Shown: in pieces, positions 17,201-21,597 of the stretch
Layout: each line of letters begins with the position of its first letter
How positions within the stretch are numbered: the first letter of the stretch is position 1
Assembly (NCBI GenBank): GCA_002269645.1
Contig: NIVC01000181.1
Coordinates: forward strand, 1-64,000
Direction of reading: 5' to 3'
From: Macrostomum lignano
Lineage: Eukaryota
Length of the DNA: 64,000 nucleotides
The notes under the pieces: model-generated
Told to the model about the DNA's origin: nothing
Database searches by the model: none
Seen by the model: the letters and a program-made list of their open reading frames with translations, nothing else
Program-made: the position numbers and the translations under genes

Positions 17201-20200
17201 TATGTACATAGAGCTGCGTCTTGAGAGCTCTTCAAGAGCGCTAACTAGGATAGTATAATCAATCAACCATAACTCAGCGAACTATCAATTTATCTATCAA
17301 TCAACCAATCAAGTCAGTCAATCAACCCTTCAATCCGCTATATCATAACGATAGCCATCTTATTTATTTTACTTGCATGTACGGCCGTATCGGCTTGCCT
17401 CTCCATCTGCAGCGCATTTGTCATTCTATGCGTCTTAGCTGGTTAAACTCAACTTACTCGGAATTCGATTGATAGCTCGCAGCGGACGCAGCACTCGAAT
17501 AGTTCGAATAGCCGTCAAGCTCAAATCCTTGGTGTGCGGCAGGTACTCCAGCAGCCTGCAATGCGGAGTGTTGACGGTGACTCCGATGTCGCTACCAGCC
17601 CATTTGCCCAGACCTACCCAGCAACAACGATGAAGCCGTCCAGCCGGTTCCAGGAGTCGCCCAGGTATCCCAGCTTGCCCCAGACTCCCATGGCCGCCAC
17701 CTTGACGCAGAGCTCCCAGGCGAAGAAGGCGAATACGGCGTGGTCGAATCCGCTGAGCGCTCGGCACCGCGTCATCGCGCAGTCTTCGTCCACGCAGGGC
17801 TGGTACATGCCCAGCGTGATGCAGTTGGCCAGGATCACCAGCATGCTGATGCGCTCGAACCACGTGACCGGCATTTGGCGGCCGACGGTTTTTTTGTAGC
17901 CGATGGAGTTAAGGAAATCTGTCTGACTGTTTGTCTGTCTGTCTGTCTGTCTGTCTGTCTGTCTGTCTGTCTGTCTGTCTGTCTGTCTGTCTGTCTGTCT
18001 GTCTGTCTGTCTGTCTGTCTGTCTGTCTGTCTATCTGTCTGTCTGTCTGTCTGTCTGTCTGTCTGTCTGTCTGTCTGTCTGTCTGTCTGTCTGTCTGTCT
18101 GTCTGTCTGTCTGTCTGTCTGTCTGTCTGTCTGTCTGTCTGTCTGTCTGTCTGTCTGTCTGTCTGTCTGTCTGTCTGTCTGTCTGTCTGTCTGTCTGTCT
18201 GTCTGTCTGTTTGTCTGTCTGCGTTTTGTTGGAGGCGTCTGGCTTAGTGTCAAATTTAGTATCAGTCTGGGCAGCAGAAGAGGCCAGTATGCAGGGCTCT
18301 ATCCCCACAGAAGCAGTTGTGCAGAAAGATTTTCATTCCTATATCTATCTCCCACCAGATTCGCATCGGCTTATCTGTCTCTCCAGTACAGTAATTTCGT
18401 CGGCTATAAATTCCCAGATTATCCGTGATTTAAGTCCTCAACAAGCTCTTCACTGTCTCTGCCGGATGAAGTTTCTCTTCATCACCGCAGATGATGAATG
18501 ATGCCAGCCTTGAAGGCGACAGCAGCAAAGGTGGAAATATACGGGCGAATAGAGCGGTGAGTTCAGCAGAGCCCCAGAGATCGTCTAGTCAGCATGAGGA
18601 TGGCTGATCGGGGAAGAGAGGTTCAGCTGCAGAGAGAATGGGATGGGGCAGAGAAATTTTTAGGCAGTCGTGGAAATGAGGGAATTGCAGGTAACAGGGG
18701 GGGGGGGCTGGTAGAGGCAAAAATTTCCATTGTCAGCCGCAGCATCTCCAGACTTGTTGCGGCTCTTTTCGGCCGGGGCAGCTCAGCTTCATCATTTTCC
18801 TCCATCCTCCGTGAGGCATCAACAATTTTCTTCAGAGCAGGAGATGGGGGGGGGGCGAGTGATAAATCAATAGGTCTTTTTGTCCAGCTTTCACTTTGCT
18901 GGCTCCCTTGTCTTTCGTCTTTCCTTCCTGACGTCCTGGTGATTTTCTAACAGCATTCTTTAAAACAGTCTCTGCTTCTGCCTGTCTGCCTGGGCGGAAG
19001 AGGCTATGAAGATATTCTGGCTGCATTATTGACTAAGGAAGCTGAATATTGTCATTGGTGCACGCGAACTATAGCGATGACTTCGTGGCTTACAACAAAC
19101 AAATTGAGGTCATAAGAAGAAAGTGACTTTAAAGCTCTTCATAGTGACTGCTACGAGTACTATAGTATTTTGAACTAATCAAAAACTCCAACTCGACAAT
19201 AACAGGATGAGTATAGAGTGGGCTAGGCGGAGGGTCAAGGGAGATATGATGAAGAAGGAGAGAGTGCTTGAGAGAAATAAGAGCGAGTGGGAGTAGAGAG
19301 AGTTAAGAGTGGGGTGAGAGAGGAGGAGCAGCGGGAGAGAGAGATAGAGTGAGGTGAGAGAGGAGGAGTAGCGGGAGAGAGATAAGAGTGAGGTGAGAAA
19401 GGAGGAGTAGCGGGAGAGAGATAGAGTGAGGTGAGAGAGGAGGAGTAGCGGGAGAGAGATAAGAGTGAGGTGAGAGAGGAGGAGTAGCGGGAGAGAGATA
19501 AGAGTGAGGTGAGAGAGGAGGAGTAGCGGGAGAGAGATAAGAGTGAGGTGAGAGAGGAGGAGTAGCGGGAGAGAGATAAGAGTGAGGTGAGAGAGGAGGA
19601 GTAGCGGGAGAGAGATAAGAGTGAGGTGAGAAAGGAGGAGTAGCGGGAGAGAGATAGAGTGAGGTGAGAGAGGAGGAGTAGCGGGAGAGAGATAAGAGTG
19701 AGGGGGGAGAGGCAGAGGTCAGTGAATCATAGCTGCCTCAATTATGAGAATAGTAAATGTATTTCGCCATGCCTACGTGAAGCCCGGGAGCCCATATAGT
19801 GAGCAAAATGAGGGAAGAGACGCGCAGAGCCGAGCAGAAGGAGAAAAGTGGCAGGGCCGCGCCCAAAGCCAGTCGGATTTGACATATCGATCTGGGGTTC
19901 CATCTACAGCCCCCCCGCTGCCTCCGTGTTCTGCGTGTTGCACAGGCGCGTGTGGGGAATTAATTTCTCTGTAGCTAAGCTACAGCAATGGGGAATTTAA
20001 TCTCATACCAGCTCGCTGTAGGCTATTTACGGGGCTCAGTGGATTCGGTACAGTGCCTTCATCGGTATGCAGGTACGAGTTGTAGGGACTATAGTTCATT
20101 GAATATATGGGATTCAATACCTCTCTGTAGCCACTCCTCCTAATCTTCAGAATGAAACAAATAACTAAATCCATTTTACAACAGCCTTATAAGCGGTTTG

Positions 20201-21597: not shown

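What the first reader, a model, noticed from the sequence alone, without database searches (positions are those of the whole stretch)
17864..21406. AT-AC minor intron of Cav3 with an in-frame GT-AG pair nested inside: candidate twintron
Seen: U12 donor ATATCCTTTT (21406), branch TTTCCTTAAC (17917-17908) and AC (17865-17864) restore WP|WFER. A strong U2 donor TTG|GTGAGT lies 47 nt inside (intron start 21359), and a CAG acceptor lies 55 nt inside the other end (17919). Using the inner pair adds 102 nt, a stop-free in-frame 34 aa just before DI-S1 ([34 protein letters not shown], sharing its boundary codons). Established: voltage-gated Na/Ca channel genes carry a conserved AT-AC intron at about this position, and Drosophila prospero has this U2-inside-U12 geometry. 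Inference: either a developmental switch between spliceosomes or an intermediate in U12-to-U2 conversion. Caveats: the inner AG follows a (GACA)n tract with no polypyrimidine run, and being in frame alone has about a 1-in-3 chance.
Basis: partly seen in the sequence, partly recalled or inferred. Interest (0 to 1): 0.72.

Follow-up and report, generated by a model that had tools for sequence, protein, structure and literature searches.

The report
Known Cav3 minor intron, not twintron
This is the ancient minor-spliceosome (AT-AC) first coding intron of a T-type calcium channel gene; the second intron proposed inside it is most likely a coincidence created by a microsatellite, and the only unusual feature is that the intron's 3' end lies abnormally far from its branch site.

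Summary
The U12 donor, the branch site and the WP|WFER junction belong to the conserved AT-AC first coding intron of Cav3. This intron is already published for Drosophila and human. I found it at the same codon phase in a scorpion, an ostracod, a butterfly and dozens of metagenomic animal contigs.

The twintron reading is not supported.
- The inner acceptor is only the last CAG of a (GACA)76 array. It has no pyrimidine tract.
- The array offers a CAG every 4 nt and is stop-free in all frames, so any donor finds an in-frame partner.
- The 47-nt 5' extension has intron-like codon usage.
- None of about 60 homologous junctions carries an insertion.

A different anomaly emerged. The AC that restores WP|WFER lies 44 nt past the branch motif. 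In 45 of 48 orthologous intron ends this spacing is 9-16 nt, and the maximum is 36.
- Two nearer ACs exist. One is at the ideal spacing but shifts the frame. The other is in frame and adds 8 residues.
- The spacer has exon-like codon usage in the frame of exon 2 (p about 0.01).

The true 3' boundary needs RNA evidence and a check of an A7 run.

The parts
21407..21597 (-). Cav3 coding exon 1 (MTTIQQQK...RAITW, ends with CC of the Pro codon)
   Evidence: Aligns with the PYPGF...WCL..IT.P N-termini of homologues.
21397..21406 (-). U12-type 5' splice site ATATCCTTTT, phase 2 (CC|)
   Evidence: Same motif and phase in scorpion L003, ostracod L005, L056 and butterfly L087.
21354..21362 (-). Inner U2-like donor TTG|GTGAGT (G at 21359). 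Strong, but probably cryptic.
   Evidence: 7/9 match to consensus. A second site, GAG|GTAACT, has its G at 21329.
21360..21406 (-). 47-nt would-be 5' exon extension. Not coding-like.
   Evidence: codon-usage log-likelihood ratio -8.2 bits, below all exon windows; GC3 0.44 against 0.73 for the gene.
17918..18221 (-). (GACA)76 microsatellite that abuts the branch motif. It supplies a CAG every 4 nt.
17919..17921 (-). Inner CAG 'acceptor', which is the last unit of the microsatellite. No pyrimidine tract.
   Evidence: pyrimidine content 0.33 against 0.50-0.72.
17908..17917 (-). U12 branch-site motif TTTCCTTAAC (branch A about 17909)
   Evidence: Unique in the window. The block TTCCTTAACTCCA is shared with L003 and L004.
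17896..17897 (-). AC1: AC at spacer 12, the U12 optimum. Using it adds 32 nt and causes a frameshift with a stop after 19 codons, as assembled.
17889..17895 (-). A7 homopolymer. One extra A would put AC1 in frame (+[11 protein letters not shown]).
   Evidence: inference.
17888..17889 (-). AC2: AC at spacer 20, in frame, adds VGRQMPVT
17864..17865 (-). It restores WP|WFER.
17863..17907 (-). 45 nt from the branch motif to the TGG codon (the 44-nt spacer plus the first exon base, 17863). Exon-like codon usage in the frame of exon 2, and free of AG.
   Evidence: log-likelihood ratio +7.16 bits. The fraction of intron windows reaching this is 0.005, or 0.010 when GC-matched and stop-free.
17618..17863 (-). 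Exon 2 as defined by AC3 (WFERISM...IVVAG; domain I S1-S2)
17458..17555 (-). Exon 3, which follows a 62-nt GT-AG intron
21611..21618 (-). Second ATATCCTT, in the leader 14 nt upstream of the ATG

Best explanation
Window 21406 to about 17864-17896 (minus strand) is the orthologue of the ancient U12-type AT-AC first coding intron of T-type (Cav3) calcium channel genes. U11 would bind ATATCCTTTT, U12 would pair with TTTCCTTAAC, and the minor spliceosome would remove the intron.

The nested GT...AG pair is not a second functional intron. It is a cryptic U2-like donor plus the last CAG of a (GACA)76 microsatellite.

The real peculiarity is at the 3' end, where 33 extra nucleotides separate the branch motif from the conserved AC|G TGG. 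Three ACs compete.
- AC1 (17897-96) has the ideal spacing but is out of frame.
- AC2 (17889-88) is in frame.
- AC3 (17865-64) gives the conserved protein.

My inference is as follows. About 45%: exon 2 really begins near the branch site and carries 8-11 extra codons. That means AC1 if the A7 run is really A8, otherwise AC2. About 40%: AC3 is used over an exceptional 44-nt spacing. What is shown: the motifs, their orthology, the spacing distribution and the codon-usage signal. What is inferred: which AC is cleaved.
For: - The protein is Cav3.
- The AT-AC intron 1 of Drosophila Ca-alphaT is published and is U12 in human too (PMC2831892 Table 2).
- The same donor motif and phase occur in L003, L005, L056 and L087.
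- 48 distinct orthologous 3' ends carry a U12 branch motif. Terminal dinucleotides are AC in 36, AG in 11 and AA in 1.
- The inner acceptor lacks a pyrimidine tract. Being in frame is trivial. The 5' extension is intron-like.
- No homologue has an insertion at the junction.
- Spacer lengths are 9-16 nt in 45 of 48 orthologues, then 19, 22 and 36. The window gives 12, 20 and 44 for AC1, AC2 and AC3.
- The optimum branch-site-to-3'ss distance is 11-13 nt (PMC3584512).
- Spacer codon usage is exon-like only in the frame of exon 2.
Against: - There are no RNA data, so inner-pair use cannot be excluded.
- The inner donor is as good as the gene's real donors. U2-like donors lie within 120 nt of the U12 donor in 4 of 5 species.
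- For the proximal 3' site: AC1 is out of frame as assembled. An insertion between P and WFER is seen in no orthologue. AC|G TGG at 17865-63 has exactly the orthologous context.
- For AC3: a 44-nt spacing with two intervening ACs conflicts with the known U12 spacing rule.
Confidence: 0.8

Rival explanations
1. This is a genuine prospero-type twintron. The major spliceosome uses GTGAGT (21359) and CAG (17919) to make a +34-aa Cav3 isoform. The minor spliceosome makes the short form.
For: - The donor is strong.
- The 102 nt are in frame and stop-free.
- The 3' 54 nt are coding-like in that frame.
- If AC1 is the preferred U12 site, the U12 product is frameshifted, so another productive route would be needed.
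- U2-like donors recur near this U12 donor in 4 of 5 species.
Against: - The acceptor has a pyrimidine content of 0.33 and sits in 300 nt of (GACA)n, with no recognisable branch site or tract.
- Being in frame is guaranteed by the array.
- The 5' extension has intron-like codon usage, below every exon window.
- No homologue or transcript has an insertion.
- The scorpion and L056 extensions contain stops.
- The butterfly has no nearby donor.
Confidence: 0.07
2. This is an AT-AC U12 intron, 21406-17864, with an unusually long 44-nt branch-to-3'ss spacer, and nothing else happens.
For: - It restores the gap-free conserved junction seen in all homologues.
- CAC|G TGG matches orthologous 3' ends such as L009 and L012.
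- The 55 nt are AG-free.
- L069 has a 36-nt spacer that contains an in-frame stop, so long spacers do occur naturally.
Against: - The spacing is beyond all 48 orthologues and beyond the 11-13 nt optimum.
- As I recall, Dietrich et al. 2001 reported that spacings above 20 nt activate nearer sites and that the U12 spliceosome does not scan. I could not retrieve the paper.
- Two intervening ACs exist, one at the ideal spacing.
- The spacer is coding-like, and no RNA structure shortens it.
Confidence: 0.4
3. This is an intermediate in U12-to-U2 conversion. The U12 signals are relics and the intron is now removed by the major spliceosome.
For: Conversion of this very intron does occur elsewhere. 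L083 ends TTTTTCAG|G TGG with no U12 branch motif. A cryptic U2 donor lies nearby.
Against: Both U12 motifs are perfect 10-mers, which would not persist without use. There is no pyrimidine tract plus AG anywhere near exon 2.
Confidence: 0.03
4. Regulated unproductive splicing or a decaying gene. The minor spliceosome mostly uses AC1, giving a frameshifted transcript that would be degraded by nonsense-mediated decay.
For: AC1 is the best-placed site and gives a stop after 19 codons.
Against: Twelve downstream exons are intact and strongly conserved, so a productive mRNA must exist. A one-base homopolymer miscount explains the frameshift more simply.
Confidence: 0.08

Closest known systems
AT-AC U12-type intron 1 of Drosophila Ca-alpha1T and its human CACNA1G/H/I orthologues (Lin et al. 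2010, PMC2831892, Table 2)
   Same: Same gene family, first coding intron, AT-AC subtype. The donor /ATATCCTT follows the Pro codon before WFER, and there is a TCCTTAAC branch motif.
   Different: In the window the frame-restoring AC lies 44 nt from the branch motif instead of about 10-16 nt, and two nearer ACs are present.
Drosophila prospero twintron (U2 intron nested in an AT-AC U12 intron; Scamborova et al. 2004, as described in PMC3291851)
   Same: The geometry: a U2-like GT downstream of the U12 donor, an AG upstream of the U12 3' site, and an in-frame difference of about 30 aa (29 aa in prospero).
   Different: In prospero both isoforms are expressed and the inner signals are conserved across insects. 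Here the acceptor is a microsatellite CAG without a tract, the 5' extension is non-coding in character, and no relative shows the insertion.
dUrp/ZRSR2 twintron and the vertebrate twintrons (Lin et al. 2010; Janice et al. 2013, PMC3564746)
   Same: Overlapping U2 and U12 splice signals.
   Different: Those are supported by transcripts and by conservation. No calcium channel gene appears in the vertebrate twintron paper.
Cryptic U2-type splice sites next to U12 introns (reviewed in PMC8329584)
   Same: A good U2 donor lies tens of nucleotides from a U12 donor. Such sites are normally silent and become active when minor splicing fails.
   Different: Activation has not been tested here.

Membership tests
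U12-type (minor) intron, AT-AC subtype | 5' splice site /ATATCCTT | tested here: met
   ATATCCTTTT at 21406-21397
U12-type (minor) intron, AT-AC subtype | Branch-site motif TCCTTAAC near the 3' end | tested here: met
   TTTCCTTAAC at 17917-17908, unique in the window
U12-type (minor) intron, AT-AC subtype | Branch site about 10-20 nt from the 3' splice site (optimum 11-13) | tested here: inconclusive
Met for AC 17897-96 (spacer 12) and borderline for AC 17889-88 (spacer 20). Orthologues are 9-16 nt in 45 of 48.
U12-type (minor) intron, AT-AC subtype | No polypyrimidine tract; terminal AC | tested here: met
U12-type (minor) intron, AT-AC subtype | Orthologous position and phase shared with known U12 introns | tested here: met
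   CC|ATATCC in L003, L005, L056 and L087. Published for the fly and human T-type channel.
U12-type (minor) intron, AT-AC subtype | Removal depends on U11/U12/U4atac/U6atac | not testable with these tools
   Needs knock-down or in vitro splicing
U2-in-U12 twintron (prospero type) | Consensus U2 5' splice site inside the U12 intron | tested here: met
   TTG|GTGAGT at 21359, 7/9 match
U2-in-U12 twintron (prospero type) | Competent U2 3' splice site (branch point, pyrimidine tract, AG) upstream of the U12 3' site | tested here: not met
   Pyrimidine content 0.33 at -20..-3 against 0.50-0.72 in the gene's eight acceptors. The site is embedded in (GACA)76.
U2-in-U12 twintron (prospero type) | Both products keep the reading frame | tested here: met
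   +34 aa with no stop. This is uninformative because the array supplies an in-frame CAG for any donor.
U2-in-U12 twintron (prospero type) | Inner sites and extra peptide conserved in relatives | tested here: not met
   No insertion in about 60 homologous junctions. Donor-like sites recur, but at different offsets and frames, with stops in two species. The 5' extension is intron-like. No close relative of the species was available.
U2-in-U12 twintron (prospero type) | Both spliced isoforms observed in RNA | not testable with these tools
   No same-species transcript is in the protein collection; the best hit is 71% identical.

The most novel reading that the evidence does not exclude
Cav3 intron 1 may be a site of real competition between spliceosomes or between 3' sites. 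In this species the minor spliceosome's best-placed AC gives a frameshifted, degradable mRNA. Productive channel mRNA would then require either long-range use of AC3 or the U2 inner pair. The recurrence of a U2-like donor 47-105 nt inside this intron in 4 of 5 animals (P about 0.004-0.007, threshold chosen after the fact) may point to an old, conserved U1/U11 interplay at this intron.
Probability: 0.1. Interest if true: 0.65.

Novelty: new member of a known kind. Interest (0 to 1): 0.28.

Why it matters
As filed, the finding matters little. The AT-AC intron of T-type channels is textbook, and the twintron idea fails the tests that can be run on sequence alone.

The residual value is in two points.
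- This copy breaks the strict branch-site-to-3'ss spacing rule of U12 introns, or else hides a lineage-specific 8-11 residue insertion just before domain I S1. One RNA-seq alignment would settle which. If the 44-nt spacing is real, it would be a useful natural test of how the minor spliceosome picks its 3' site.
- It warns annotators. In-frame GT-AG surrogates around AT-AC introns are easy to find, and they are already mis-annotated in several database models of this same junction.

Tried and rejected
- I looked for same-species transcripts or proteins. None is in the collection; the best hits are 59-71% identical. The high score of the Pollicipes hit came from a duplicated gene model, not from relatedness.
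- I tested whether an RNA hairpin could shorten the 44-nt spacer. Folding energies are no better than shuffled sequence, with z = +1.0 and +0.2.
- I looked for a second U12 branch motif near AC3. None exists.
- I looked for another copy of the 25-nt distal spacer in the window, to test whether it is a duplication. There is none.
- I checked other donor/acceptor combinations: inner GT to AC3, the U12 donor to the CAG, and inner GT to the first exonic AG. All are out of frame (and counting).
- An Rfam scan of the window found nothing.
- I tried to read Dietrich 2001, Scamborova 2004, Levine & Durbin 2001, Wu & Krainer 1999 and Dietrich 2005. None is held.
- Several orthologue look-ups failed because the gene was too long or not on record.
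- The species was not identified. The protein resembles spiralian Cav3 (the ITWP|WFER junction; best exon-2 matches are to unidentified metagenome contigs), but this is a guess.

Full report
**Observation**

I read both ends of the proposed intron on the minus strand.
- Exon 1 starts at ATG 21597 and ends ...ACA TGG CC at 21407.
- The intron opens ATATCCTTTT at 21406.
- TTTCCTTAAC lies at 17917-17908.
- AC lies at 17865-64, followed by G TGG TTC GAG CGC.

Joining 21407 to 17863 gives ...[11 protein letters not shown]|[14 protein letters not shown].... The inner GTGAGT starts at 21359, 47 nt into the intron. The last CAG ends at 17919, 55 nt from the intron end.

**What the gene is**

The spliced N-terminus hits only T-type (Cav3) channel proteins at 46-71% identity. 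With a cDNA-like contig from a relative (L001) and a scallop-like transcript (L002), I mapped twelve intact exons running down to about 3970.

No same-species protein or transcript is in the collections. The junction sequence ITWP|WFER resembles spiralian sequences: scallop has TWS, a rotifer has TWA, and P0142 has TWP. The species itself was not identified.

**The U12 intron is real and already known**

Lin et al. 2010 list intron 1 of the Drosophila T-type channel gene as AT-AC U12, conserved as U12 in human.

I found the same donor at the same phase in four other animals.
- Scorpion L003: AAT CC|ATATCCTTTTT.
- Ostracod Darwinula L005: AAT CC|ATATCCTTTTCG.
- Metagenomic contig L056: TCA CC|ATATCCTTTCC, with a complete 343-nt intron.
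- Butterfly L087.

A scan of metagenome contigs with an exon-2 profile returned 80 loci.
- 48 distinct 3' intron ends carry a U12 branch motif. Their terminal dinucleotides are AC in 36, AG in 11 and AA in 1.
- 13 distinct loci read straight through ..ITWP/ITSP|WFER, so they are either cDNA or intron-less.
- One locus (L083) looks converted to a U2 intron, ending TTTTTCAG|G.

**The twintron does not hold up**

1. Acceptor. TRF shows a (GACA)76 array at 17918-18221 that ends one base before the branch motif. The inner CAG is its last unit. Pyrimidine content at -20..-3 is 0.33, with a single T. The gene's eight bona fide acceptors score 0.50-0.72.
2. Frame. The array gives a CAG every 4 nt and has no stop in any frame. 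The last three CAGs, at 55, 59 and 63 nt from the end, cover all phases. Each of the four GT sites in the first 51 nt has nine in-frame, stop-free partners. Being in frame therefore carries no weight.
3. Coding character. I scored codon usage with a log-likelihood ratio built from the gene's 861 codons against its own introns. The 47-nt 5' extension scores -8.2 bits. That is typical of intron and below every exon window. Its GC3 is 0.44, against 0.73 for the gene.
4. Conservation.
   - Every homologue that spans the junction reads x-P/S-WFER with no insertion.
   - The only exceptions are database models, several from fish, that visibly replace the AT-AC junction with surrogate splice sites.
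   - In the scorpion and in L056 the corresponding 5' extension runs into a stop.
   - The published insect twintrons are prospero and dUrp only.
   - The vertebrate twintron paper mentions no calcium channel.

What remains in favour is the donor, which is as good as the gene's real donors. A site matching MAG|GTRAGT at 7 of 9 positions or better lies within 120 nt of the U12 donor in 4 of 5 species. The offsets are +47 in the window, +80 in the scorpion, +105 in the ostracod and +93 in L056. The butterfly has none within 300 nt. The chance of this is about 0.004-0.007, but I chose the threshold after seeing the data. I record this as unexplained.

**The real anomaly is the 3' end**

The optimum U12 branch-site-to-3'ss distance is 11-13 nt. 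Another paper gives 12-15.

I measured the spacer from the end of the branch motif to the last intron base in the 48 orthologous ends. It is 9-16 nt in 45 of them, then 19, 22 and 36.

In the window three ACs follow the motif.

| Site | Coordinates | Spacer | Result |
|---|---|---|---|
| AC1 | 17897-96 | 12 nt | adds 32 nt; frameshift; stop after 19 codons |
| AC2 | 17889-88 | 20 nt | adds 24 nt; [14 protein letters not shown] |

Relative to relatives, 33 extra nucleotides sit between TTCCTTAACTCCA and AC|G TGG. No stable RNA structure bridges them.

These 45 nt (the spacer plus the first exon base), read in the frame of exon 2, score +7.16 bits.
- Exon windows score 8.3 +/- 3.8.
- Intron windows score -10.9 +/- 8.6.
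- Only 0.5% of intron windows reach the observed value, or 1.0% of GC-matched, stop-free windows.
- The other two frames score about -3.
- GC3 of the spacer is 0.80.

**Reading the 3' end**

Two readings are close to even.

The first is that exon 2 really starts near the branch site and carries 8-11 lineage-specific codons.
- For it: the spacing rule, the codon signal, and the fact that 33 is a multiple of 3.
- Against it: it needs either AC2, with AC1 acting as a decoy, or AC1 with the A7 run (17895-17889) being a one-base undercount. A site at TA|C would also be in frame, but as I recall from Dietrich 2001 (not retrievable) a penultimate A is required.

The second is that AC3 is used.
- For it: it restores the universally gap-free junction and has the orthologous CAC|G TGG context. 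There is a natural precedent in L069, whose 36-nt spacer contains an in-frame stop.
- Against it: L069 has no intervening AC or AG, whereas the window has two ACs.

I put about 45% on a proximal site, about 40% on AC3, about 7% on productive use of the inner U2 pair, and the rest on unproductive splicing or unknown exons.

**Comparison and novelty**

The locus works like, and by position is a member of, the known Cav3 AT-AC intron. It fails two defining features of a prospero-type twintron: a competent inner acceptor, and conservation. The expression criterion could not be tested.

It is a new member of a known kind with an atypical 3' end. Interest is low to moderate. One RNA-seq alignment and a look at the reads over the A-run would settle it.

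Noticed in passing
window 21611-21618 (-) and 17872-17874 (-): A second perfect U12 donor motif (CCA|ATATCCTTCC) lies 14 nt upstream of the exon-1 ATG. If it were spliced to AC1 or AC2, it would skip exon 1. The in-frame ATG inside the spacer would then start an N-terminally truncated protein, MPVTWFER.... 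With about 4 such motifs expected by chance in the window, this may be coincidence.
   Followed up: partly
L003 about 3248; L005 about 3303; L056 about 576; window 21359 and 21329: A consensus-like U2 donor lies 47-105 nt inside this same U12 intron in 4 of 5 species examined; butterfly L087 has none. The offsets and frames differ between species. The chance is about 0.004-0.007, with the threshold chosen after the fact.
   Followed up: partly
L069 1460-1500: An orthologous Cav3 intron has a 36-nt A/T-rich spacer between TTCCTTAAC and AC|A TGG. The spacer contains an in-frame stop and no intervening AC or AG. It is a natural long-spacer U12 3' end.
   Followed up: partly
L083 1460-1500; L036-L059 (several loci): The same intron appears converted to U2 type in L083 (TTTTTCAG|G, no branch motif). 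In 11 distinct loci it ends in AG after a U12-like CCTTGAC motif, so those are of the AG subtype.
   Followed up: no
proteins P0125, P0129, P0134, P0161, P0164, P0181 and others: Several database Cav3 models (mostly fish) replace the NP|WFER junction with odd peptides ending ...T|WFER. These look like gene-predictor GT-AG surrogates for the AT-AC intron.
   Followed up: no
window 24135-31896 (+): A Ty3/gypsy-type LTR retrotransposon with a gag zinc knuckle, reverse transcriptase, RNase H and integrase. The pol region is split over overlapping frames, which could reflect decay or assembly indels.
   Followed up: partly
window 59552-61429 (+) and 54514-55539 (+): An intronless 625-aa otopetrin-like ORF with an (SGQ)n tract, and a 341-aa ORF with a LAPTM/Mtp-family match.
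   Followed up: partly
window 8511-9674, 10279-10854, 17918-18221, 47038-47921, 19296-19712, 21042-21330, 4332-5372, 53365-54003: An unusually high load of long tetranucleotide (GACA/TCTG-type) arrays and 25-39-nt minisatellites, several of them inside Cav3 introns. They create long spurious ORFs.
   Followed up: no
window 36001-42000 and 30001-32000: A sharp swing in base composition: GC 0.28-0.33 across 36-42 kb, against 0.65 at 30-32 kb.
   Followed up: no
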